A stretch of 63,289 bases of DNA, the filler included, from Parasitella parasitica NRRL 2501 (taxonomy: Eukaryota > Fungi > Mucoromycota): assembly GCA_025201805.1 (NCBI GenBank). It is 5 parts of 5 records of this genome, joined end to end, with 100 filler letters (N's around TTAATTAATTAA, not from the genome) between each part and the next. Parts side by side here need not be neighbours in the genome. Positions count along the whole stretch, not along the records: positions 29,095 to 50,837 come from MU619329.1; 4 more parts are not named here. One strand, 5' to 3'. The position numbers and the translations under genes were made by a program. The notes under the pieces were generated by a model. It did not search any database. It was not told where the DNA came from and worked only from the letters and a program-made list of their open reading frames with translations. Of this stretch, positions 4,192-42,051 are shown one piece after another (positions within the stretch are counted from its first letter, which is position 1; each line of letters starts with the position of its first letter).

Positions 4192-5406
4192 GCCCTTTCC
4201 ATTGCGCTCTTAATTTTTAATATTTGGCCAGATTAAAACCAACTCCTTTTTTAGTATGATTCTAAAGGTCTTTGTAAACTGCCTGTTTCTTTTCCAAAAC
4301 CTCTCAAGATATTGCTTTCAATATGGCATTGGGGCCACCATTGGTTGTTATACACGTTCTTTTATACCATCTTTGAAGTAGCAATAACCATAGCAACTTA
4401 CCCAAGACTGGCGTTAACTTCAAACCCTAAAAATCACTATCAATCAACCCCTCCAATTATTTTGAAGAACTTTTAACATTAATAAAAAACACTAAGAGTC
4501 ATACAGTAAAAGTAATTACTAGTTTCTATTATAGTGCGATTATAACGGGTTGAACTGCTTATGTTCAATAACTGTGGAATGTATAAATGTAACTATTTTA
4601 TCTAATAAACAAGAGAAGAGCCTCTCGTTGTCTCTTTTTGCTACAGTTCTTTTCATATATATATATTTATCTCAAGTGTAGAATTTTATTAAACAACGAG
4701 GATATTATTTTGAAAGTAAGCATGGCTAGAAGAGGAAGTAGTAGCTGCTTTTTGCTCCTTCAAATCAGTAACTGTTGTGCTGTCGTTTTTCGAAAAACTA
4801 CATTGGGGAGGGGAGGTTTTTTATAAAAACTAGACTAGCTCAATTGCTGAAAACAGAGAATCATACAATCAAAATTGCAGATAAGTGTTACATAGTCTTG
4901 AAAATTTTATATATACACAAACTAAACAATTACTTTCTCAAGAAATAATTGTAAAGAATTAGTAGAAGACTTGCTCTGAATATGCCCAAAAAAAAAGCGT
5001 GCCTGTGATGAGATTTTTGCCGTACAACAAAGATCCAGAAAAGAAAATCCCCACAAAGAAAACAAATCGTACTGCAAACCGACCTCCGACCCAACTGAAT
5101 GAAAAACACAAGGCGTACCGGTACAAGCTTTTAAAATCCAGATATTTTTGATCACTTCAGAATGGTTGCAAAGCTATTAAACTGCAATAAAATCTAGTAA
5201 CCGCTTATTTCGATGCAAATTGAAGCTTAATTCATAATGCCAACGTTTCAATCAGTAAAAAATATAAGCTTGCTTTTCATAAACCATGCAAAAGGGGGGG
5301 GGGGATTTATTGTAAATTTCTCAATTTCTTCATAAGGATTTTGATACAAAGCAATTTAAATGCTTTAGGAGATATCTAGTGGCGATTATACCTCGAATAT
5401 GAAATT

Positions 5407-5447
5407 TTTTTTAATGAGGAGAGCCTCCAGCTCTCCTCATTAAAAAA
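5407..5447. repeat. Perfect 18-bp-stem hairpin
   Basis: TTTTTTAATGAGGAGAGC-ctcca-GCTCTCCTCATTAAAAAA. Confidence 0.9.
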
Positions 5448-5466
5448 TTAATTCTGAACTCCAGAT

Positions 5467-6046
5467 ATGGGTATAGGGCCTGTGCACGATACTGTATCTG
5501 ATTTACTCCTGAAGGTGGACCTTAGAATTTTACATGACAGAGTTCGACAAAGATACAACGTTGAAGCAGATGTTGGCGTTTTTGAGGCTTCTGAAGAGGA
5601 TCCCGGAGATGCGAAATATATTGGTGACAGATGCAAAGCTGTTATTGATAAATTCATACTTGATGGCTGTTTGATTGATTCTGTCGACTCTCTTCAAATA
5701 TGTGGTCTTGAAATCCACTTTGGTAATACCACTCTCGCTGAACCTGGACTTTATGTAGGTACCCAATTCTACACTGTAACTATCGACAAGTCGCTCAGCA
5801 ATATACCCAAATACTTTGACCTGGCTCTGTTTTCGTGATCAATGTGTTGCAATCTCGAATCAATATGAAGACTATCTGACAAGTACTCGCTCAAAGAAAA
5901 TTTCCACGAAGAGAACTATCCACGGCTTACCCAAAGATGATCTCATAACGAAACAAAGTTCAACCCGTGGATGTTGGAACCCACCTCGCACTACAAAGAC
6001 TCCACCTCCGCCTCCATCGAAAATTTTATTTGGTAATGACTCTTAA
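5467..6046 (+). pseudogene. Fragment of a Mucorales nuclease-fold-like hypothetical gene (frameshifted, 5'-truncated)
   Basis: LLKVDLRI...VGVFEA...KYIGDRCK...LQICGLE pattern. Frameshift near 5830 and a Pro-rich C-terminus. Confidence 0.45.
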
Positions 6047-29094: not shown

Positions 29095-29479
29095 TTTTTT
29101 ATTATAATTTTTTTCCGTGAATCCATATAACAATTTATACCGATTCCACAGTTTCAATACTTTTCTCAAATCAAAGGCACTAGGGAGCCTTTGTGAGTCT
29201 CTCGACTTGTTTTCCAAATTATGTAGATAACCAACGCAGAGTATCAAAGGGGCAAGATTTAGAAATTACCAGTATAAAAAGTTGTTTCTAGAGCATATTA
29301 GCCTATATATTCGATACATAATCAAAAACTGACAAAAAAAACACTTTGCAAGCATATCCAATAAACCTATTAATGTTGTGCGAACATAAGCTATGAAAAT
29401 TTTGGGATCTTCGCAAGCTGCAATGGGCAACATATTTCTGAGCTTGAAATTACCACAGCTAATATATAGGCCCTTAGCA

Positions 29480-30030
29480 TTGAAGCACCTGTTTCAATTG
29501 AGGAGCAAAACATGAACTCTATAAGCAATCTGGTTATGTCTTGATATGAATCAATAGCCAAGATAATGTAAAATATAACCTCAAAAGCTATTTTTATCTA
29601 GCTTTATGTTTAGGTTTAAATAAATGCCGCTTAATCATGACCATCACCTTTTCTCCCGCTTAAAATTATAATCTACAATCTCTGATATCTTTACAAACTA
29701 TTATGCGATAGAGACGCAACCTTCAGCTAAATTCTTCTTTTTTTGCAGCATTTTACAACATATCCGAGTTTTATGAACATCTGGCCATTTTTTAGATTTT
29801 GCTATGTTTGGACCCCAAACCTCATATCCGATTTTCAGTTTTCAACTTTGGGTCAACCTTCAGGGTCATTTTTAGGTACGAATTTGAGGTCCAAACTAAG
29901 AACAAAGGTTAATACTAGTATGATAAATGTACCTCACTACGTCTTCCGATTCTCGATATCTATCTTTGCTGTCGAGATATTCCCAAAACCAAATTTTGCA
30001 GATTTTCCAAATTTTACAGCATATGTTCCT
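29480..30030 (+). repeat. Dispersed repeat family X (copy 2)
   Basis: Inverted homolog of 21900-22480. The spurious ORFs MQHFTTYPSF.. and MQRFTTYPSF.. mirror each other. Confidence 0.85.
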
Positions 30031-31099
30031 ATAACAAGCACCATATTTTGCAACTAAACCAAGTTTAAGTTCCTAAGTAAAATAATAAAGCACATTTTGG
30101 TACACATACTGGTATAAAACATGTTGTACGTGATCTCGAATTCGACAAGCTTGGGCCAATTTTGTCTTTTTACGTTAAACTTTGTCCGTCTGTTTCTCAA
30201 AAAGCTACTATGACACTTTGGCTTGAGTGATTATTAAAATCTATTTGAAACTTAACTATCTACTAGTCTTATTAGTTTTTAGATAGATATGTCGAAAAAA
30301 ATATTTTTTCAGATGTTTTTAGCAGAGGCTTCATATATTTTCACAACTTTCAGAGCAATAAATAGTATTTAAAGATACATGATATAGCAATATAAACATA
30401 GAGCTACAACACAGCTACGGAATAGTTTTTGTTTGATCAAAAAATACCAATTTTTGAGCGAGAAAATCTCGAAAAATGGAATTGATTTTTACCCTTTTGA
30501 ATGGGTTCATTTTGGCCCTCTAAGTATAGGGCCGGAAAATCGTAGATTCATTTTGATCGCCACAAGATTTTGATTTTTGGCAGACATAATAGAGCTACAG
30601 CTGCGTAAAAAATATTGATGCGTAGGCATTGAGATTATGGTTTGTTTGGTCAACTTTATAGAGCTGAGTGTGCTCAAAATATGCTTGATTTTACTCAAAA
30701 ACTATCAAAAAAGGCGTTTTTTGAATATTTGAAAATTGTTAATAAGAAAAGATGTTTTTATGCCCTTGTAATTTATATGGTTGGATGCAGAATTTATTTT
30801 GTTGAATAAAACACTTAGTACGCATATCCGATATACCTATTGCGTTTATGAGATATTTAGCAATGAACTATGCGAAAAAAGCTGGAAAATGGTTTGCGTT
30901 AAATGGAAACACAGTGCTGAGATTCAATATACAGCCTCTTTATTCGATGTAAATGTGGGCACCTACTATTTCCAATTGAAGAACATAGCATAATTCTAAT
31001 AGTTATTATGCTTATGTCTCCATATCAATCGATAGCTGAGATACTGTATAATACAGTCTCAAAAATAATTTTTGTATTGCTTCACTTTTGGTTGAAATA

Positions 31100-31255
31100 A
31101 ATACCACCAAATCTGAAATATATCCTGTTTCCCCGCTTAAAAGACATAATTTGCAATATGTAATATTTTTTTCTTTTGTACCATTCTAAAATGTATCCGA
31201 GTCTCATGTACCTCTAATCATCTTTAAAATTTTGCTATGTTTGGAACCCAAATTT
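31100..31255 (+). repeat. Dispersed repeat family X (partial, more diverged copy 3)
   Basis: CCCGCTTAAAA, TATCCGAGT and TTTTGCTATGTTTGGAACCCAAA shared with copy 2. Confidence 0.6.
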
Positions 31256-32079
31256 TATCTATAAAATACAGCGGGTACAGATTTATCAGAAAAACTTGAA
31301 AGAAATTAATCAGGTAGAAATCCGTTTATTAAATTCAAATTGGAGGGTTTACGTACTTTCTATGAACTGAAGGAAGCGATGTGAGGATAAAAGTGTTAGT
31401 GATGAGATCCAGGAGATAGAGTAGATTGTACCTACCCCCAAATGTCGTGCCATATTATTTTATGATCTGATGTTTTTCTCTTTAGTATGAGTTTATGCCA
31501 TTATATTGGCATCCGATTTTAGAATTGATATATCAGGTATGGTGGATTTTTGGCAGTTCATCAAATTTAATTGGCGGTTAGTCGTCATCTGCCTCACTTT
31601 TTCTAAAAGTTATCTATTATTTTGCGTTTGATTTGTTTTATATCCTATTCAAAGACTTAGTAACGTAGGAATCTCTTGATTAGACCATCCGCATTCAAGG
31701 GTAGCGGACCTTCAGGCTGCGTCCTTAGTGAAAATGTAGTTGGCATTAGAAGATTTTCTTTTGCCTAAAGACTATTAAGAGTAGCGTAGTTACTGTGAAT
31801 TGTATTTCGTAAATCTGGTGTTGTTCCACGAACTGGAAAAAGGAAGTTATCTATCGCAGATTTTAGCATTGTCAGTTGCTATACATGACTCATTTTAATA
31901 AAGCCATGTTCTTTAATATCCCACAGCTCTAAAATATATTTTAAAAAAGAAATATGGATGTTTGTATATATACATTAACCTAAAAAGTTGGATGTCCCTT
32001 TTTAGTGAGACGGAATAGAGACGTTATACTATTACAGTCTTGGGTGAGATATGTGAAGAAATGCAGTTGATTTTATTTA

Positions 32080-33400
32080 TGAGAGTCAAAAGAAAACCTC
32101 CATTTGGTGGATGTAGTGAATTAGGGGGGGGGGATCCACTTTATTTGAGCCGTATTGCTAGTCCACACAATCAACGTATAATGCACTTTCGATCTAATAT
32201 TTACGAATTATTGCTTCCCAATATTAAAATTCAAGACAGATACAGGATCTCGATTCCATACTCATGTTGGCTCAGTTTGTAAAACTAACGGCATTCTAGT
32301 TAGAAACCTCCTCATAATTCCTCATAGTATTCTCATATTTCTGGTAGCAGCCCATGGCAAAGCAGAGTAGGCAAAGTCTTTCTATTGTAACTTCTTGAGG
32401 GTTTCTTACCGTTTTAAAAGTTTCCAATCCTCCCTCACAAAAAGAGAAGAAAGCAAATGTGCTTTGTTTGTTGTGAATCATTCCCTTAGTAGTAAGGACT
32501 AAGAGCTTTTTCAACCAATGCCCTTAACCTGATACACTTTTCGTATTCTTCTGTATCAATGAATGATGATTTGGTCTTTGTTCACTTTGCTCCTGGTGAT
32601 TGAGAATTTGATGATGTCTTGCAATCTTTGTTCTTGTCATTTTTGTGTACACCTGACCTGCTTGTTTTCTTCATGAAGTAAAGCAAATCTTGCCTTAAGG
32701 GTCCATTAAAACGCATTTATTTTTTGTTTTCTTCGATTCTGCCTTGGTCAAACTTTCTGTATATGCTGCTGCATTTTCCTTTTTTCATTTCCGATTTGGG
32801 GGGGGGGAGCCATTTTTCTGTTTGCAGTTTCATTTTACTTGATTATGGAGACACCGATACCATCAGTTTCAATTGTTCCTGAAAGCGCATCAACTTGCCC
32901 ATTCTTTGATAGTATTTAAAAGCTTTGTTTTGTAGCTTGACTTCAACATCCCAAGTTTGAAACTTTTTGTCCATTTTAAACATTGATTTGAGCTTTAAGG
33001 TATTTTGGTGGATGATCTTGAAAATTGTCATGTAGTTAAGGGATAAACGCGGCTCGCAAAAGAAAGCAAAGAAACTGGCACGTAATCCATATCAATTCTG
33101 CTCGAATTGGTTGCTACAATAAATTGTATCTTTGCGAACAAACTTAAGGGTTCAAGAAGCTCTTCTTGGCACAGTAAATGAGAGTTTCAACACACCGAAA
33201 GCAGGGAATTGATAAACAATCAGAACTTAAATAATGTCTGTTTTGAGACACTGAAAAGATAAATTTGATAGCCAAAATAAAATGTTCATGAATTTCACTT
33301 AATCCTCTACTCAACACTGACAAACATTGAACAAGGACTACGAAGCGCAAGACTATGATTTGCGTCATTTGGGCGTCGACAATATGCATTGAGGTGAATT
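32080..33400 (-). pseudogene. Degenerate, internally deleted Fanzor1, copy B, with candidate omegaRNA and element end
   Basis: Minus strand in order: FLCFLLRAAFIP/NYMTI; NKAFK...GTIETDGIGVSIIK (32880-32840); KNKCVLMDP (RuvC-I D at 32703)/RQDLLYFMK; KGIG; FCEGGLETFKTVRNP; CHGLL; VWNRDPVSVLNF (RuvC-III, 32258-32247). The 5' limit near 33400 is approximate. Confidence 0.9.
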
Positions 33401-34817
33401 TATTCTCATTTAAAAGTAGATTGAAAGTACTATGCTCGGTCTTTGGGCTTGGAAGCTTATCATAAAGCGTCGATAAGCACTTGCTCTATTATAGAATTGT
33501 TTACCATAAACTTTCTATTGATGGGCGGGATAGTTAAAGACTAATATTGGCCTTCTCTTCCAATGTTTATGAGGCTTTTTCTTTTTTCATATTGGATTAC
33601 CTTGGTCTCCGGTATGCATTATATCTTTGCTCAACTCACATAATGAATTGAATGTCTCCGTCTTGGAGTCAAAATTACTCTATGATGCTCATTGTTGGTT
33701 CGGCTAAAAATGTAACATGTATCGAATACGCTTGACAATGTAGTCTCTGTCTTGGGTGTCGGATTTGATGCGAATTCTTTCTCGGCTGAATGAAAATTCC
33801 TATCCATATAAAGGTTACGATGATCAGCAGTAATAGCCATACTCACTACCAGTGTTTTCGTTTGTCGAGGATTCATTGGAGGTATACCGGTAACCAGTAG
33901 TCTTTTATTGAGTGGGTGAGCTAATTGGGTAGTGTTAGACGCATATCTTATGAAAACTACTGGTTTTATTTGATTGATCATTGACGGCTGAACTCTCCTG
34001 TTGATGAATGGAGCAGGCAATGGTTGCATTGGATCTATGCGCTGATCATCAAACAAGTTGGCTCTTCTGAAAGAACACTCTACAGCAGGACCAGCATGAT
34101 GGATAGTTTTGGCGGGGACCACTGCATTGATCAACGATACTCTTGTCTATGTCTCTATTTCATCCTTGGCGTCGTCCATGCAAGAACAGCTTGCTGTTCT
34201 TATTTGACTCAACCCCATTGAGATGCGATTCCTTTTCTCCTCGTTTCGATGCCCACTTGATAAGATGCAGGCTGAGGAACATCTCATCAACGCAAATAAG
34301 TCTACTACATACATATGCTTTATTTATTAACCTTAATTCAAATAAACTGTTTTGTTGTACAAACATTGGGGTGGTGATCTGGGCATATTCAGCAAAACAT
34401 TTATACATTTTTGATGCGACTATTTAAACAGTAGATCATGCACAGCTCTTTTTTTTTCCGTTGGTGTAAAAAATATATGAATACCATGCAAAAAATACGT
34501 TTTTTTTTTTTTTTTTTTTTCAAAAAAGCAGAATGTAAAAAGGGAAGAGATTATGGGCAATCAAGTACAAGAGAATAGGTTGATATTTACAAGTTTTGCA
34601 ATTGTTAGGATAGTTTGTTTGCTTGCATTGCATTTATTGTCTAATTGACTCTTACTACTCCTTGAAAATGCCCCTCTTCTTGTAAAATTCTTTTGCACAA
34701 ATAGCATATCTGATTTGGTTAAAATTTGTAGCCAAAACCAAGTCCTCGTGTACTTCTTAAGGCAAGTTGGTTGAATTCAATCTTCGATACATAGCCTTTT
34801 TGTCCCCATATACCTTC

Positions 34818-36839
34818 ATGTACAAACTTAAAAAGAAACTGACCAACTACAACCACTGTATACCGCTTGAAATATGGATGCATGTCTTTAGCTACATCAA
34901 ATCTCCCAGACAATTGCTTCAATGCAGGCTGGTTTGTAGAAGATGGGATTATCCTGCAGAGACGGCCATGTTAAGCAAGGATTTGGAGATATATGGAGGA
35001 AGTGCAGTGAAACTGTACAACCACCTAGCCAAAAAGCCTGGCCGAACTCACCTAGTACGGTTTATTGATGTGGACGTTTATCGCGAGGATTCTGACATGA
35101 TCAACCTGCTCAAAGTGTCCTTCAATCCAAAAATGCGGCACTTTGCAGCTGGCTTGGACCCGGTCGGTGCTGAATTCTTTGCTGCTTTCCTTGAAATCAT
35201 CAAAGCCCTCCCCCAGGATACGGTTTACAGCATGCGCAGAATTCCCGAACCCGCTGTTCTGAAAGATAAAAATTACGCAAGGGTTGCTTATACGTTTCGG
35301 AGGACCTTGCAACACTTGCAAATCTCAGTAGAGTGCAGAGCAATAAGCACATATCTAAGACGGCTCAGGGTATTCAGAAACTTGATTGCACTGACTTTGG
35401 ATGCAGAGTCCCTGGATAGCGTAACCAATTTGGATGCCATTTTAAGAAATTGCCCTTGTCTTCAGGAACTCGAGCTGACAAGTCCTGACAATAGCAGCTA
35501 CGTAGTCAAAAGCCATGACACTGTCTTACAGTGGGTAAATCAGTCTGTAACAAAGGTGAAAAGTCTGGTAGAACTCACAATCACTTTTGCCCGCCCGGAC
35601 TTGGTGGAGTATCTGATCTACAAATACCCAAATGTTAGTTGTCTCATGTGCTCGGGTGATCGCTATCAACGTGATAATGCTACGCGTGTGTTGGCTGCAG
35701 TCAAAGACGTTAGGGATTTCGAAGTGACGTATTATTTTGAGCATCTTCAAGACATAGAATCGTCGATTTCAACCATCTGCAGTGTAGATGAAAAGCCTAC
35801 CAGAATCATTGCAAAGGTGGGTTACAATCCAGTCGAAGTTGGATTTAATGCCGAAATGCAACTCAAGATTTCCAACGATGAGCAAAGGCTCATTCAAGTC
35901 AATGTTGACCTGGCATATCATTTGCCGAGTCAAGTTCATTTGCAAGTGCTGGAAAATTTGGGAATGTGCGGTAGTCATTGCATTGTGCCTCACCTGGAAG
36001 TCAATTTGCTGTCTTTGGAGCCAGCAGCCGATGCGGGTCTGATGACCTTTTACGACATAGTTGATAGAATGCCTGCAACTGAACGTATCGATCTCTTTAT
36101 AGAGCGAATCATGTATAACCCTATTGCATCGTGGAGCATCAACACTGAAAGAAGACTATCGCAGCTGGTCCTCAGATATGCCGAGGTTGATCCTAGAGTC
36201 CTTGTTCAGATCAGCGAAATGTTTCCAGGCTTGCATTCTCTTACATTCTACTCTTGCTGCATACTCGACAGCTACCCGAATGATGGCCAGGCTCAAGAAA
36301 AAGTGTTCAACATCTATATGCCTTACAACAACTTTTCCACTCTAAAGCTGATGGCGCCCACAGAGGGCAGCTACCCATACACCGGAAAGCCTCCTCAAAC
36401 CAGGCCCATGATAGAGCACAACACAATATCTGGTTATTGCTACCTTCAAGTGTCTGTACTCGAAGTCGATGTTCATATGTACTGCAGACTAAAGGCTTTC
36501 TCACCGCCCGTTTTCCTTACTCAACAAGAATTCGAAGCTCGTCCCTACAAAGCAGACGACGCTACAGTCTACATCACCTGCGCAAATTTGGTGTCTTTGC
36601 ATATAAACCTTGTTGGCATTGACTTTGATTTCAAGGTCAAAAATTACATATTCAGTTCAATCAGGGAGAGTTTGGACGACTGCACAATGGAACTTGAGTC
36701 AGGTCCCCAAAACTACTCCTTGGAAGACGAGTTGTACGAGCTGGATCGTTTGCAGAAGCTTCAATCTAACGGGCAGATTTGGCTCACATACAGACAGAAC
36801 ACAGATGCTGTAGAGAATAAGCCATTTGTCTTTTGCTGA
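34818..36839 (+). CDS. F-box protein with degenerate leucine-rich repeats (Mucorales-expanded family)
   Basis: IPLEIWMHVFSYIKSPRQLLQCRLVCRRW F-box and ILRNCPCLQELEL LRR. Long intronless ORF with first ATG at 34818. Confidence 0.85.
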   Translation: MYKLKKKLTNYNHCIPLEIWMHVFSYIKSPRQLLQCRLVCRRWDYPAETAMLSKDLEIYGGSAVKLYNHLAKKPGRTHLVRFIDVDVYREDSDMINLLKVSFNPKMRHFAAGLDPVGAEFFAAFLEIIKALPQDTVYSMRRIPEPAVLKDKNYARVAYTFRRTLQHLQISVECRAISTYLRRLRVFRNLIALTLDAESLDSVTNLDAILRNCPCLQELELTSPDNSSYVVKSHDTVLQWVNQSVTKVKSLVELTITFARPDLVEYLIYKYPNVSCLMCSGDRYQRDNATRVLAAVKDVRDFEVTYYFEHLQDIESSISTICSVDEKPTRIIAKVGYNPVEVGFNAEMQLKISNDEQRLIQVNVDLAYHLPSQVHLQVLENLGMCGSHCIVPHLEVNLLSLEPAADAGLMTFYDIVDRMPATERIDLFIERIMYNPIASWSINTERRLSQLVLRYAEVDPRVLVQISEMFPGLHSLTFYSCCILDSYPNDGQAQEKVFNIYMPYNNFSTLKLMAPTEGSYPYTGKPPQTRPMIEHNTISGYCYLQVSVLEVDVHMYCRLKAFSPPVFLTQQEFEARPYKADDATVYITCANLVSLHINLVGIDFDFKVKNYIFSSIRESLDDCTMELESGPQNYSLEDELYELDRLQKLQSNGQIWLTYRQNTDAVENKPFVFC

Positions 36840-37096: not shown

Positions 37097-40000
37097 ATGC
37101 CAACGCCCAGGATATACAGCGCGATCCTTGGGTTGATTGCCATAAGATTATGTAATTTTGTATCTGCAGAGGCATCGCCAACTGTAGATCTGACCATGAT
37201 GGCTCCTTGGTCAGCACCGAATTTATTGATCGAAGTCGCGTAAGGAACCCACTGCATTTTTTTTTTTTACTGATACGCAAAGATGCTAATGCACGCATGT
37301 GCCTAAACTTGAATCAACAGCGAGACTATAGCCACCTACAACGAATCAGCCTACTTGAGCTTCATGCACGATTTCGTTTCATTAGAACAACACTCGCCTT
37401 CTTGGACACCACATCAAACCTACAAAGAAGCAATCAAGGTCATCTCTGCTTTGGGCGTAGACGAAACCAACTTCTTCAAGCTGTCATTAGCCATCCATGA
37501 AGCAGCCCCTCGCATTGAGGCCTACAACCAGTTTTACAGAGAGAGCGTCGTGCCTGAAATTGTTCAGTACAATGCTGAATGTGATGTGTGGGCACAAATT
37601 GAAAACCAACAGTACTGTGATGAAGCTCAGTTCATCGATGCATTGTCATCAAGTCAGTCAGCAGCGCCACCCACACCTATAGAGGTTCTCCCTTTTGACC
37701 ATATTGTATACAACACTGCATCAGCAAACCCTACTGTTGCACTTTATACAGAGCGTTTCTCGACCAAATTCGCCCAGTTCCTCGATGCTCTCCAACAGCA
37801 TGACGTGACACATGTCATCCGATACAGACCAGACACTGCGAACGTGCCAGTACCTCTATACTTGTCTGGCTACGGTGTAGAAATGGCCCTGAAAAAGACA
37901 GACTATCTCGTTATCGATGACAGGTCTTCTCAAAGTAAGTTTTTTTTTTTATGTAATAATACTTTGCTTACTTTTTTTTCTACGTCGTCTTCTTCTTAGA
38001 GGTGTCCGGTATCAAGGACAAAATCTCGAATGCGGGCAAAAAGTTTGGACAATCACTGTTTCAAGCAACTCAGAAAGAAGCCATTGAGCCTGTTACCCCA
38101 AGCGAAATTCATAGACTTGGTTTCAAGGCCGCACAATACGTCTCCAAATCAAACAACCCCTTGGCAACATTGAATCAATTAGTGCAAGATTTCCCAAAGT
38201 ATGCCAAAAGCGTCAGCGAATTGGACATAGATACTAGATTTGAAGAGGAAATATTGGGCAATCAGCATAATTTCCTTCGTGCTGGTATGAGTGCAGTATG
38301 GCTTAACGGTAAAGGTCTTGAATTCAGTCAATTGGATCCGTTTTTGTAAGTACTCCAGTGTTGCTGGATGGGCCACAACATCTAACTTTTTGTTAGCCTC
38401 ACCCGTGCGTTGCGCAGTGAGCGAAAGCTGGTGGCCGCGTTTGAAGAGCTCGGTTTCACACCCAAAGACGCAATTCAAGTCATGTCGAATCCAGCATTTA
38501 CTATCGCCACTCAATCAGACAAAGCTGCCAACGTCGAAGTATTTGATATGAGAGATACGCTTGAGGAACCCTTTGTCATTTGGTGGAACGATTTAGAAAA
38601 AGACAAGAGATACAGTGAATGGACATCCAGCCTGGAAGACTACATTAGGCCGCAATACCCGGGCCAATTGTTGCCAGTGAAAAGAAATGTGTTTAACCTG
38701 ATCATGATTGAGGATTTGGGCCAAAAGGAATCAATTGCCAGAGTTGTGAACGAACTTCACATGATGATCAAAAGACTTGTTCCTGTTCGATTTGGCATCG
38801 TCTCTATTATAAAGGAAAACGACAGTATTTCTACAATAATGGCACAGTCTTTGAGTTATATTATCCAAGAGCATGGCAAAGGTGCCGGCATGAATTTTCT
38901 GACTTTGGTAAGGTCTTTGTAATACAGTATTTCAAGTATGACCTAATGATGTGACATTTAGGTACTGGAAACAATTCACTCTGAGGGGAAAAGCCGACCT
39001 GCCTTAAAGACCATCTCAAATTCCTTTGCGAAAACTGTCTCTAGTTCGGGAAAGCCAAAATCTGGCAAGAAAACATCTTTTGAGGAAGCACTCACGACAC
39101 AAGATGCATACACACAAGCCAGTAGCAGCTTCTTGAAACGTATGGGAATCACTGAATTGGGAGCCCAAGATGGTATCATGTTTATTAATGGAAAGCTCCT
39201 TGAATTCAGCGAAGAACGTCCGTGGGTCCAAGTGTTGATGCCTGCATTGCATGAAATCACCAGAGAGATCCAAAAGATGGTCTACATGGGGGAGTTTCTG
39301 GATGAAGGGTTCGACTTTTATGAGCATATCATGACACAACCCAACGTTGTAAAGCACCGTAATTCATTTATTGTCCCATCAAACTCCCATCCTCTTGTCA
39401 TTCAAGAGTTTCCTACAACAAAAAAATCAGACAAGCTTAAATATTTCCAAGCTGGTGACAAGAGTAAGCAGGCCGGCGTCAATCTTTGGGTTTCTACAGA
39501 CTTGAACACTGCCCCCGGTTTGAAACTTGCATCAGAGGCATTATTATATGCGCAGACAAATCCAAATGTCAGAATTGCCCTGATCCATAACCCTGTTGAT
39601 GCTAAAGACAAACCAGAAATCACTGTCCCCATTGTTGATCACGATAACCAGCCCACAATGTCCGATTTACTTGGAACTCTCATTTTTGCAGATGAAACCT
39701 TGGATATCGAACAATTGAGTAAACTGATTGAAAATGCTATTGAGCCGATGGTGAAGCAATCATATGGCGGAAACTCGGTGCCTGAATTTATCATTCCTGG
39801 CTCACCGATTATCGAAATGGAGGCAAAAGCACAGTCTGACGGTTGGAAAAACTTGGCGGATGCGCTAGAGAAGGATGGCCTTGAGAGGTCACTCAGCAAT
39901 ATCATTGTCAATGGCAGAGTGGTCGGACCTATTTCGCCTGGTGCTGTATTCAGCAAAGAGAATTTTGCTGCTTTGGTGGATCTGGAATACAGCAAGAGAA

Positions 40001-42051
40001 TCGCTCCGGTTGAACAGGCTATCAGCCAAGTCAAATACGCCATACCCGCATCAGATGATTTGGCTGATGTGCTGACAGCAATCTCTGTTCTTATAGAAAC
40101 AGATAAAGCCATCACCAGCAAAAGTATAGTCGAGGAGAATGAGCCTAGTTATCGCCACCGTGTGTATGAAAACATTCCCAATACCAAACATACTCGTCTC
40201 GTCATAGGCGATCCAGATAACTCGTTCTTGCAGATCGGATTCATCATTGATCCTTTGAGCGAAACTGCTCAAAAATGGGTGCCTTTGATCAATACATTGG
40301 CAACAATTGAAGGTGTCTCTGTTATCATGCATCTTAACCCTGTCAATGACTTGCAAGAGTTGCCCTTGAAGCGTTTCTATCGCTACGTATTTGACAGTGA
40401 GCCGCATTTTGACCCTGCCACTGGTGTGCAAGAAATCCCTACTGCTTACTTTAGCGAATTGCCGACTGACCCTCTTTATACGTTGGGCGTCGAGACTACC
40501 AACGCTTGGCATGTTACAGTTCGCGAAGCCAACATGGATCTTGACAACATTCTTTTGAATTCACTCAGTAAGGAAGAACATGGCGTTTCTGCTGTGTACG
40601 AGCTTGAAAACATCCTCCTCGAAGGCCATTGCTTGGATTCAAACAACAAATCGCCTCCTCGCGGCCTTGAGTTTGAGATTGCTACGCCCTCTAATCATTC
40701 TCGCAAAGACACACTTGTGATGGCCAACTTGGGCTATTTCCAGTTGAAAGCTTTGCCTGGCATATGGAATCTGGGGTTGCGTGATGGCCGCTCGTCTGCC
40801 ATTTACTCCATCGAAGACATTGGAGACAAGGGCAAATGGAACTGGGATGCCACTAAAGAGAGCAAGACGACCGAGAAAGCAGGCAGAGCACTGGCTTTGA
40901 CTTCGTTTGAGGGGATTACTGTGTTGCCTCTTGTTCACAAGAATTCTGGCATGGAATCAGAAGACGTATTGGAGAGCGCAGACGATAGAAAGCACGGAGA
41001 TGGATTGTGGTCTTCTTTCTCTAGCAAACTGTTTGGCAGCAAAAAAAGCCGGGATATAGTGGCCAGCAAATCAAAGCAGGCTGATATTAACATCTTCTCC
41101 GTTGCATCTGGAAAGCTGTACGAGCGGTTCCTTTCCATCATGATCGCCTCTGTTATGAAGCACACACAAAGCACTGTCAAGTTTTGGTTTATCGAGAACT
41201 TTTTGTCGCCCGAGTTTAAGGACTTTGTTCCGCACATGGCCAAGGAATACGGGTTTGATTATGAAATGGTTACCTACAAATGGCCTTCTTGGCTTCGCAG
41301 TCAGCGTGAAAAGCAGCGTACTATCTGGGGATACAAGATTCTGTTCTTGGACGTTCTTTTCCCCCTTGATTTAGATAAAGTTATCTTTGTCGATGCTGAT
41401 CAGGTAAGCACGGTCATGCTAGGAGATTCCGCACATTGCATTAATCAATTTCATCAAATACAGATTGTGAGGACTGACCTGAAGGAACTCGTTGATATGG
41501 ATCTTCAGGGCGCACCCTATGGATACACTCCTTTCTGCTCTGATCGCACTGAAATGGATGGCTTCAGGTTTTGGTCTGAAGGGTACTGGAAATCTCATTT
41601 GAGAGGCAAGCCCTACCATATTAGTGCGCTCTATGTAGTTGACCTTGTTCGTTTCCGTCAGTTGGCTGCCGGTGATCGCCTTCGAGCGCAATACCAACAG
41701 TTGAGCGCAGATCCCAACTCGCTGGCCAACTTGGATCAAGACTTGCCGAACAATATGCAACACCTAGTGCCTATTTTTTCTCTGCCCCAAGAATGGCTCT
41801 GGTGCGAGACATGGTGTAGCGATGAAAGTCTGAAAACCGCTAAAACCATTGATTTGTGTAACAATCCTCTAACCAAAGAGCCCAAGCTCGACCGTGCCCG
41901 TCGACAAATCCCTGAATGGGAGACCTATGATAACGAAATCGACGCATTACGTAAAAAAAAATTATTAGGAAATCCAGTGGTTGCAGATGAACATGGCGAA
42001 CAAATAGTAATTTCCGCTAACAAAAAAGAGCATCTCAAAGACGAACTGTAA
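37097..42051 (+). CDS. UGGT: UDP-glucose:glycoprotein glucosyltransferase (GT24)
   Basis: Signal peptide, LSGYGVEMALKKTDY, INIFSVASGKLYERF, WGYKILFLDVLFP, VIFVDADQ, NLDQDLPNN and C-terminal KDEL. Several introns, including in-frame 41404-41463. Confidence 0.97.

What the first reader, a model, noticed from the sequence alone, without database searches (positions are those of the whole stretch)
32080..33400. Hidden Fanzor1 (eukaryotic RNA-guided nuclease) remnant B, with RuvC-I and RuvC-III aspartates intact
Seen: stitching minus-strand frames gives, in order, CFLLRAAFIP/NYMT, GTIETDGIGVSIIK, KCVLMDP/RQDLLYFMK, CEGGLETFKTVRNP, CHGLL and VWNRDPVSVLNF. Established: Fanzors are TnpB-derived, omegaRNA-guided RuvC nucleases carried by eukaryotic transposons, including in Mucorales. 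The TDG / DPG / DExxTS / zinc finger / WNRD order matches the Fanzor1 layout as I recall it. Inference: this copy is dead. It has frameshifts, an internal deletion near 32550, and RuvC-II DE apparently changed to NK. It implies an OMEGA-type family in this genome that the ORF track misses entirely.
Basis: partly seen in the sequence, partly recalled or inferred. Interest (0 to 1): 0.85.

Follow-up and report, generated by a model that had tools for sequence, protein, structure and literature searches.

The report
Dead fragment of a Fanzor1 gene
This stretch is a broken, truncated leftover of a Fanzor1 gene (a eukaryotic RNA-guided DNA cutter carried by mobile elements), of a family already well known in Mucorales fungi, so it is real but ordinary.

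Summary
The stretch 33081-32224 (minus strand) is a decayed fragment of a Fanzor1 gene of the Parasitella parasitica Fanzor1 (PpFz1) family.

- **Similarity.** A DNA profile of Rhizopus copies matches at E 2e-99 and 6e-23. tblastn with a Rhizopus microsporus protein gives E about 1e-20 to 1e-23. Two pieces in adjacent frames hit the solved PpFz1 chain colinearly.
- **Damage.** It has at least 11 frameshifts and at least 5 in-frame stops.
- **Internal deletion.** About 520 bp (about 176 aa) is missing, with the junction at 32450-32453. The loss covers the RuvC insertion (FRI) domain and the RuvC-II glutamate.
- **What is kept.** The RuvC-I (VLMDP) and RuvC-III (WNRD) aspartate codons remain.
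- **What is not detectable.** The N-terminal half (about 390 aa), the ORF tail and the omegaRNA scaffold are not found. A covariance model built from 11 related loci finds nothing here.
- **Context.** The syntenic Parasitella locus has no Fanzor.

Verdict: a real feature, a dead copy of a known family, of low interest.

The parts
32450..33081 (-). 5' block of the remnant. It corresponds to about PpFz1 residues 358-575. It includes CFLLRAAFIP (33068-33039), GTIETDGIGVSIIK (32879-32838) and the RuvC-I motif KCVLMDP (32718-32698). It is riddled with frameshifts and stops.
   Evidence: nhmmer places it on DNA-profile positions 1311-1983 at E 2.2e-99. blastn shows 66.6% identity to L001, L002 and L003 at E 4e-48. 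The frameshift-aware alignments give 54-59% aa identity to P0003, P0004 and P0005, with stops at 33094, 32837, 32787 and 32488.
32701..32703 (-). Codon of the RuvC-I catalytic aspartate (D of VLMDP). The glycine position that follows (DPG) is occupied by a TAA stop and a 2-nt frameshift.
   Evidence: The family DPG aspartate aligns to SpuFz1 chain D777, which is D383; D383 is named catalytic in PMC11423790.
32450..32453 (-). Junction of the internal deletion of about 520 bp (about 176 aa). The lost segment covers the FRI insertion domain, the GNWSAP strand and the RuvC-II motif LIDE(F/Y)KT, including the catalytic glutamate and the first Cys of the zinc finger.
   Evidence: nhmmer profile positions 1983 and 2501 abut here. 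L003 positions 5206-5743 have no counterpart in the window. P0004 residues 314-489 are skipped. The family glutamate aligns to SpuFz1 E541.
32224..32453 (-). 3' block. It holds the zinc-finger (TNB) remnant CEGGLETFKTVRNP (32439-32398), CHGLL (32359-32345) and the RuvC-III motif VWNRDPVSVLNF (32261-32226), with further frameshifts and stops.
   Evidence: nhmmer places it on profile positions 2501-2751 at E 6.1e-23. blastn shows 70.5% identity to L003 5743-5883. The alignment to P0005 shows stops at 32314, 32302 and 32264.
32247..32249 (-). Codon of the RuvC-III catalytic aspartate (D of WNRD).
   Evidence: The WNRD aspartate aligns to SpuFz1 chain D1000, which is D606; D606 is named catalytic in PMC11423790.
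33082..33162 (-). Possible weak 5' extension (KFVRKDTIY against the family's YTFKKNSIYYDV). It is seen only in colinear protein alignments and is not significant on its own.
   Evidence: The frameshift-aware alignments reach 33145-33217 or 33162. nhmmer stops at 33081, and the segment alone scores E 8.
32080..32223 (-). The place where the last 25 or so codons and the omegaRNA scaffold should lie. Neither is recognisable. A 10-nt identity to the 5' end of the PpFz1 omegaRNA (ATCCACCAAA, 32112-32103) is not significant.
   Evidence: In 11 related loci the scaffold starts 101-160 nt after the WNRD codons. Covariance model R1 finds no minus-strand hit here. The string CATCCACCAAA also occurs at about 33014.

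Best explanation
The stretch 33081-32224 (minus strand) is a non-functional fragment of a Fanzor1 gene. Fanzor1 is the TnpB-derived, omegaRNA-guided RuvC nuclease carried by eukaryotic mobile elements. The fragment belongs to the Mucorales family that includes the experimentally characterised Parasitella parasitica Fanzor1.

An element of about 2.9 kb (ORF plus a 3' omegaRNA) once sat in a gene-poor, AT-rich region upstream of an F-box gene. It has since decayed.

- Shown: many 1-2-nt frameshifts, in-frame stops, and one deletion of about 520 bp that removed the FRI domain and the RuvC-II glutamate.
- Shown: the N-terminal half, the ORF tail and the omegaRNA are not detectable.
- Inferred: these parts are truncated rather than decayed beyond recognition.

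The fragment cannot make a nuclease or a guide RNA. It is a molecular fossil of past Fanzor activity in this lineage.
For: **PDB hits.** Two pieces in adjacent frames continue the same region of the PpFz1 chain.

**Family identity.**
- The one genuine hit of the representative-library search was the R. microsporus protein P0002, at 60% identity. The only other hit, P0001, is a tandem-repeat protein and was discarded.
- The word-indexed search with P0002 returned 91 proteins, all named ones from Mucorales.
- The family profile hits PpFz1 at E 1e-243 and SpuFz1 at E 4e-48.

**Homology of the window.**
- tblastn gives E about 1e-20 to 1e-23.
- blastn gives E 4e-48.
- nhmmer gives E 2e-99 and 6e-23, with 518 profile positions missing at one junction.
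- Frameshift-aware alignments show 54-59% identity, at least 11 frameshifts and at least 5 stops.
- The alignment score is 409, against 77-111 for shuffles.

**Catalytic residues.** These were mapped through SpuFz1 D383, E541 and D606.

**Missing parts.**
- The N-terminal half is not detectable.
- The omegaRNA model finds nothing.

**Placement and context.**
- The tree places the remnant on a long branch (0.49) beside the R. microsporus subfamily.
- The orthologous Parasitella locus lacks any Fanzor.
Against: - Some single-base frameshifts could therefore be assembly errors, and two C10 homopolymer runs lie in and beside the remnant.
- The 5' and 3' limits are soft. Weak colinear protein similarity runs to about 33160.
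- A marginal N-terminal profile hit at 34163-34423 (E 0.02, then 0.1 with a larger profile) cannot be fully excluded.
- The host genome could not be identified or searched.
Confidence: 0.95

Rival explanations
1. It is a live, intron-containing Fanzor1 gene. On this reading the frame changes are introns, not frameshifts.
For: Gene models of relatives did not translate directly from the fetched loci, which suggests spliced or patched models. The two catalytic aspartate codons survive.
Against: - Stops fall inside conserved blocks (IIK*NET at 32837, YY*GND at 32488).
- Frame changes of 1-2 nt fall inside conserved motifs with no room for an intron (DP/RQDLLY at 32697).
- The RuvC-II glutamate and the FRI domain are absent at DNA level.
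- There is no N-terminal half and no omegaRNA.
Confidence: 0.01
2. It is an assembly artefact: an essentially intact copy whose frameshifts come from homopolymer or long-read sequencing errors.
For: Two 10-nt C runs (minus strand) lie at 32133-32124 and 32806-32797. No read support could be obtained.
Against: - Substitution-type stops are present, which indel errors do not produce.
- Nucleotide divergence from the nearest copies is about 34%.
- There is a clean 520-bp deletion, and both ends are missing.
- The terminal branch in the tree is long.
Confidence: 0.02
3. It is an exapted fragment: the leftover is kept for a new role, such as a regulatory element or non-coding RNA for the neighbouring F-box gene.
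For: It lies about 1.7 kb upstream of the F-box gene start. Nothing else supports this reading.
Against: - The conserved F-box upstream DNA shared with Parasitella reaches only to 34358 and excludes the remnant.
- The Parasitella locus has no Fanzor.
- The decay pattern looks neutral.
- There is no Rfam hit.
Confidence: 0.02
4. The resemblance is chance, or the stretch derives from an unrelated family.
For: Pfam gave no hit for any piece.
Against: The local Pfam copy gives no hit even for PpFz1 itself, so that blank says nothing. E-values run from 1e-20 to 1e-99 across protein and DNA searches.
Confidence: 0.003

Closest known systems
Parasitella parasitica Fanzor1 (PpFz1; PDB 9cf0-9cf3; P0109, 849 aa; PMC11423790)
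   Same: - Same family and same motif order: CFPLR, ETDG, DPGRRD, (FRI), LIDEFRT, CPxC...CHGLLRC, WNRD.
- The remnant aligns to about residues 358-575 and 765-826 at about 45% identity.
   Different: - PpFz1 is an intact, active nuclease with a 71-nt omegaRNA listed in Table S3 (75 nt in the paper's text), lying 26 nt after its stop codon.
- The window copy is frameshifted and lacks the N-terminal half, the FRI domain, the RuvC-II glutamate, the ORF tail and the omegaRNA.
- It falls in a different subfamily in the tree.
Rhizopus microsporus 'hypothetical protein' copies (P0002 RMATCC62417_11331, P0003, P0151, P0163; loci L001, L002, L003, L006; Pfam DUF8286 as precomputed)
   Same: - These are the nearest relatives: 59% aa and 66.6% nt identity.
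- They are the sister group in the tree, with weak support (SH-aLRT 81).
   Different: - The copies are 91-94% identical to each other over about 2.8 kb.
- They keep the 3' omegaRNA scaffold, with a 30-nt insertion in the stem-loop 1 loop.
- The window copy is much older or more decayed, and is truncated.
Spizellomyces punctatus Fanzor1 (SpuFz1; PDB 8gkh)
   Same: It shares the RuvC-I, RuvC-II and RuvC-III motifs and the zinc-finger layout. [quoted passage not shown]
   Different: It lacks the FRI insertion: profile positions 308-425 have no match. It is only distantly related to the Mucorales family.
Fanzor1 families in Mucorales transposons described in 2013 (Rhizopus oryzae ROr, Mucor circinelloides MCi, Phycomyces PBl; PMC3627910)
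   Same: They are TnpB-like Fanzor1 ORFs in Mucorales genomes, often in non-autonomous elements.
   Different: Some of those elements have MuDR-like terminal inverted repeats and 9-bp target-site duplications. No element ends could be found around this truncated fragment.

Membership tests
Fanzor1 (descent from the family) | Significant sequence homology to experimentally validated Fanzor1 proteins | tested here: met
   Colinear PDB hits to PpFz1. The family profile hits PpFz1 at E 1e-243 and SpuFz1 at E 4e-48. Window against family: tblastn E about 1e-20 to 1e-23, nhmmer E 2e-99.
Fanzor1 (functional nuclease) | RuvC-I catalytic aspartate (DPG motif) | tested here: met
   The D codon is at 32703-32701 within KCVLMDP. 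It aligns to SpuFz1 D383. The following G position is a stop plus a frameshift.
Fanzor1 (functional nuclease) | RuvC-II catalytic glutamate (LIDE[FY][KR]T motif) | tested here: not met
It lies within the segment of about 520 bp that is missing at 32450-32453.
Fanzor1 (functional nuclease) | RuvC-III catalytic aspartate (WNRD motif) | tested here: met
   The D codon is at 32249-32247. It aligns to SpuFz1 D606.
Fanzor1 (functional nuclease) | Intact zinc-finger (TNB) cysteines: CPxC ... CHGLLRC | tested here: not met
   The window reads FFSFCEGG, where relatives have SFCPxCE, so the first Cys position is F. The CHGLL Cys is kept. The next Cys is lost in a frameshift or stop (PEI*).
Fanzor1 (functional nuclease) | Uninterrupted ORF of about 650-900 aa with the N-terminal REC/WED half | tested here: not met
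   The longest stop-free piece is 82 aa. There are at least 11 frameshifts and at least 5 stops. No N-terminal homology was found by tblastn at E<=1, by a 49-sequence profile, or by nhmmer.
Fanzor1 / OMEGA system | omegaRNA scaffold encoded just 3' of the ORF | tested here: not met
   The scaffold is present 101-160 nt after WNRD in 11 of 11 related loci, and its 7-bp stem-loop 1 covaries. Covariance model R1 finds no minus-strand hit at 31950-32260, and nothing better than chance in the whole piece.
Fanzor1-carrying transposon | Terminal inverted repeats and target-site duplication around the element | tested here: inconclusive
   Only short, AT-rich inverted pairs were found, for example 30316-30341 with 34470-34495 at 81%. 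The fragment is truncated at both ends, so its ends may be gone.

The most novel reading that the evidence does not exclude
The remnant records an old Fanzor1 lineage shared, possibly by horizontal transfer, between the Rhizopus microsporus group and a Parasitella-like Mucoraceae host. The remnant's nearest relatives are R. microsporus copies, while the only hit to the neighbouring F-box gene is from Parasitella, whose syntenic locus has no Fanzor. It would also mean that the unannotated host genome may still hold live copies of this subfamily, whose omegaRNA carries a 30-nt insertion in stem-loop 1.
Probability: 0.07. Interest if true: 0.4.

Novelty: new member of a known kind. Interest (0 to 1): 0.15.

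Why it matters
It matters little by itself. Fanzor1 families in Mucorales have been catalogued since 2013 (PMC3627910), and a member of this very family has been solved and shown to cut DNA (PMC11423790). The fragment is useful in three limited ways:

- It marks past Fanzor activity in an apparently unannotated Mucorales genome.
- It is a worked example showing that frame-stitching by eye can find such fossils.
- It is a reminder that annotation pipelines miss them: the local Pfam copy does not recognise even PpFz1.

Tried and rejected
**Searches that gave no usable signal**
- Pfam on ten stop-free pieces gave nothing relevant. This is uninformative, because intact PpFz1 (P0109) also gets no hit in this Pfam copy.
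- PDB searches with pieces 32299-32523 and 32585-32716 gave no Fanzor hit. They are too short and too decayed.
- The best hit of the representative-library search, P0001 (E 5e-11), is an 819-aa tandem-repeat protein. I discarded it as a false positive.

**N-terminal half**
- The ORF 33631-34134 has no relatives.
- A profile hit at 34163-34423 reached E 0.02 with 13 sequences but fell to E 0.1 with 49. It also lies about 800 bp from where colinearity would put it. I rejected it.
- A competing weak match at 33290-33220 covers the same protein region, so at most one of the two could be real.

**omegaRNA**
- The 10-nt identity ATCCACCAAA, at roughly the expected distance, looked promising.
- It fails the covariance-model test, and the same word recurs inside the ORF.

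**How the pieces were handled**
- In the search tools the broken gene was searched piece by piece, by reference.
- An X-joined conceptual translation was made only inside scripts, for the tree.

Full report
**Observation**

No ORF longer than 82 codons covers them. The piece is eukaryotic. Downstream lie an F-box gene (34767-36839), a UDP-glucose:glycoprotein glucosyltransferase split by introns (37355-42051), an MFS gene, Rrp7 and a DnaJ gene.

**Is it Fanzor?**

- The 82-aa stop-free piece 32846-33091 hits the solved chain of Parasitella parasitica Fanzor1 (9cf0_P residues 784-839, E 2.2e-4).
- The 26-aa piece in the next frame continues the same chain at 836-850, with 13 of 15 residues identical. 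The two hits are colinear across a frameshift.
- An exhaustive HMMER search with the 82-aa piece gave one genuine hit, P0002. This is a 375-aa Rhizopus microsporus hypothetical protein, 60% identical. The only other hit was a repeat-protein false positive.
- P0002 recruited 91 proteins, all named ones from Mucorales: Rhizopus, Mucor, Cokeromyces, Parasitella, Helicostylum, Thamnidium and Benjaminiella. They carry the precomputed label DUF8286.
- A search aimed at the N-terminal part returned 110 proteins, many already in that set, and added full-length members up to about 1000 aa.
- A 13-sequence profile of the family hits PpFz1 at E 1.3e-243 and SpuFz1 at E 3.7e-48 in the PDB. P0109 is PpFz1 itself: 849 aa, the same start as Table S3 of PMC11423790, on contig LN731931. 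The family is therefore Fanzor1.

**Extent and damage**

- tblastn with all family proteins hits only 33103-32142 on the minus strand.
- A DNA profile of five R. microsporus and R. azygosporus copies gives two nhmmer matches. Window 33081-32450 matches profile positions 1311-1983 (E 2.2e-99). Window 32453-32224 matches positions 2501-2751 (E 6.1e-23). The two abut in the window, so 518 profile positions are missing there.
- blastn shows the same thing: L003 positions 5206-5743 have no counterpart.
- A frameshift-aware protein-to-DNA alignment that I wrote gives 54-59% identity to P0003, P0004 and P0005 over 204-278 codons. It shows at least 11 frameshifts. Stops lie at 33154, 33094, 32837, 32787 and 32488, with more at 32314, 32302 and 32264. 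P0004 residues 314-489 are skipped.
- Against PpFz1 the score is 409, compared with 77-111 for six shuffles, at 45% identity.

**Catalytic residues**

PMC11423790 names SpuFz1 D383, E541 and D606 as the catalytic residues. In the MBP-fusion chain 8gkh_P these are D777, E935 and D1000, an offset of 394.

- They align to the family's DPG aspartate, the LIDE(F/Y)KT glutamate and the WNRD aspartate.
- The window keeps the first aspartate (codon 32703-32701) and the third (32249-32247).
- The glutamate lies in the deleted segment.
The same bases in frame 0 read GNDSQQTKHICF, which matches the family's GNETLQTKQTYF and is continuous with the preceding ALVEKALSPYY. NK is therefore an out-of-frame artefact.

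The deleted segment also holds the FRI insertion. SpuFz1 lacks profile positions 308-425. The YPQPE loop at PpFz1 612-616 corresponds, one residue off, to the cyclophilin-binding P614 and P616 of the paper.

The zinc finger is damaged. F stands at the first Cys position, the CHGLL Cys is kept, and the following Cys is lost.

**Missing ends**

- No N-terminal homology (about 390 aa in PpFz1) was found by tblastn at E<=1, by a 49-sequence profile (best E 0.1, at a place that is not colinear), or by nhmmer.
- Downstream of LNF (32226), the ORF tail is not recognisable.

**omegaRNA**

- The PpFz1 omegaRNA (Table S3) starts 26 nt after the stop codon in L007.
- I found the same scaffold in all 11 fetched loci, 101-160 nt after the WNRD codons.
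- Its 7-bp stem-loop 1 covaries: 96% of cells are paired, 4 pairs change on both sides, and 0 of 500 shuffles reach the observed covariation score. This agrees with the paper's description.
- A covariance model of the scaffold finds nothing on the minus strand at 31950-32260, and only chance-level hits (E>2) anywhere in the piece.
- A 10-nt identity at 32112-32103 is not significant, because the same word recurs at about 33014.

**Placement and context**

- In a quick IQ-TREE of 54 rows and 219 columns, the remnant sits on a long branch (0.49). For this tree the remnant's pieces were joined with X at each break, inside the script only.
- It is sister to the R. microsporus P0002/P0003/P0151/P0163 subfamily, with weak support (SH-aLRT 81). 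It lies apart from the PpFz1 and R. delemar clade (96).
- The only hit to the neighbouring F-box protein is a Parasitella parasitica protein, at 66% identity. The host is therefore probably a Mucorales species that is not in the protein database.
- The Parasitella orthologous locus is syntenic (F-box, UGGT, Rrp7, DnaJ) but holds no Fanzor.
- DNA similarity upstream of the F-box gene stops at window 34358.
- The 5.3 kb from 29095 to 34358 has no counterpart in the 22-kb Parasitella locus, has no recognisable gene, and is AT-rich.

**Verdict**

This is a real but dead and truncated Fanzor1 fragment of a known Mucorales family. Fanzor1 in Mucorales has been known since 2013, and this family has a solved, active member. 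Interest is low.

**Limits**

- No reads could be laid on the stretch.

Noticed in passing
L001:11463-11545, L002:6331-6413, L003:6053-6135, L006:6589-6671, compared with L004, L005, L007, L008, L009, L010 and L011 (alignment A3): The PpFz1-type omegaRNA scaffold is conserved just 3' of the ORF in all 11 Mucorales Fanzor1 loci fetched, and its 7-bp stem-loop 1 covaries. The R. microsporus L001-type copies carry an insertion of about 30 nt in the stem-loop 1 loop that looks like a partial internal duplication.
   Followed up: partly
P0007 and P0025 (Mucor), P0033 (Cokeromyces), in alignment A1; profile positions 308-425: SpuFz1 lacks this segment, which is the FRI insertion. The segment is present in family members from Mucor flavus and Mucor saturninus, and part of it in Cokeromyces. 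PMC11423790 states that FRI was found only in Parasitella and Rhizopus.
   Followed up: partly
window 32120-32142 and 32794-32816: Two G10 runs (C10 on the minus strand) have 87%-identical 23-nt surroundings. One lies inside the remnant (it encodes KMAPPPQ) and one lies just 3' of it. They may be a small duplication or homopolymer-prone sequence, and could be a source of assembly indel errors.
   Followed up: no
window 29335-29819 and 30805-31252: A diverged direct duplication (71-84% identity) with a period of about 1.47 kb lies in the AT-rich region beside the remnant. Its identity is unknown. It has no protein, Rfam or tRNA signal.
   Followed up: partly
window 33631-34134 (minus strand): A 167-codon ORF lies in the AT-rich DNA between the remnant and the F-box gene. 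It has no Pfam, PDB or Atlas relative and a low protein-likeness score. It is not the Fanzor N-terminus.
   Followed up: partly
window 34358-34724 and L012:9471-9872: The upstream region of the F-box gene is conserved with Parasitella parasitica (70-90% identity) up to window 34358. No similarity to the 22-kb Parasitella locus is found below that point, and Parasitella's upstream neighbours (GDSL lipase, PQ-loop) are absent from the piece.
   Followed up: yes
P0109 (PpFz1), P0124, P0004, P0005: The local Pfam copy lacks PF26935 (DUF8286) and gives no relevant hit, not even OrfB_Zn_ribbon, for intact members of this Fanzor1 family. Most database names for them are 'hypothetical protein'.
   Followed up: yes
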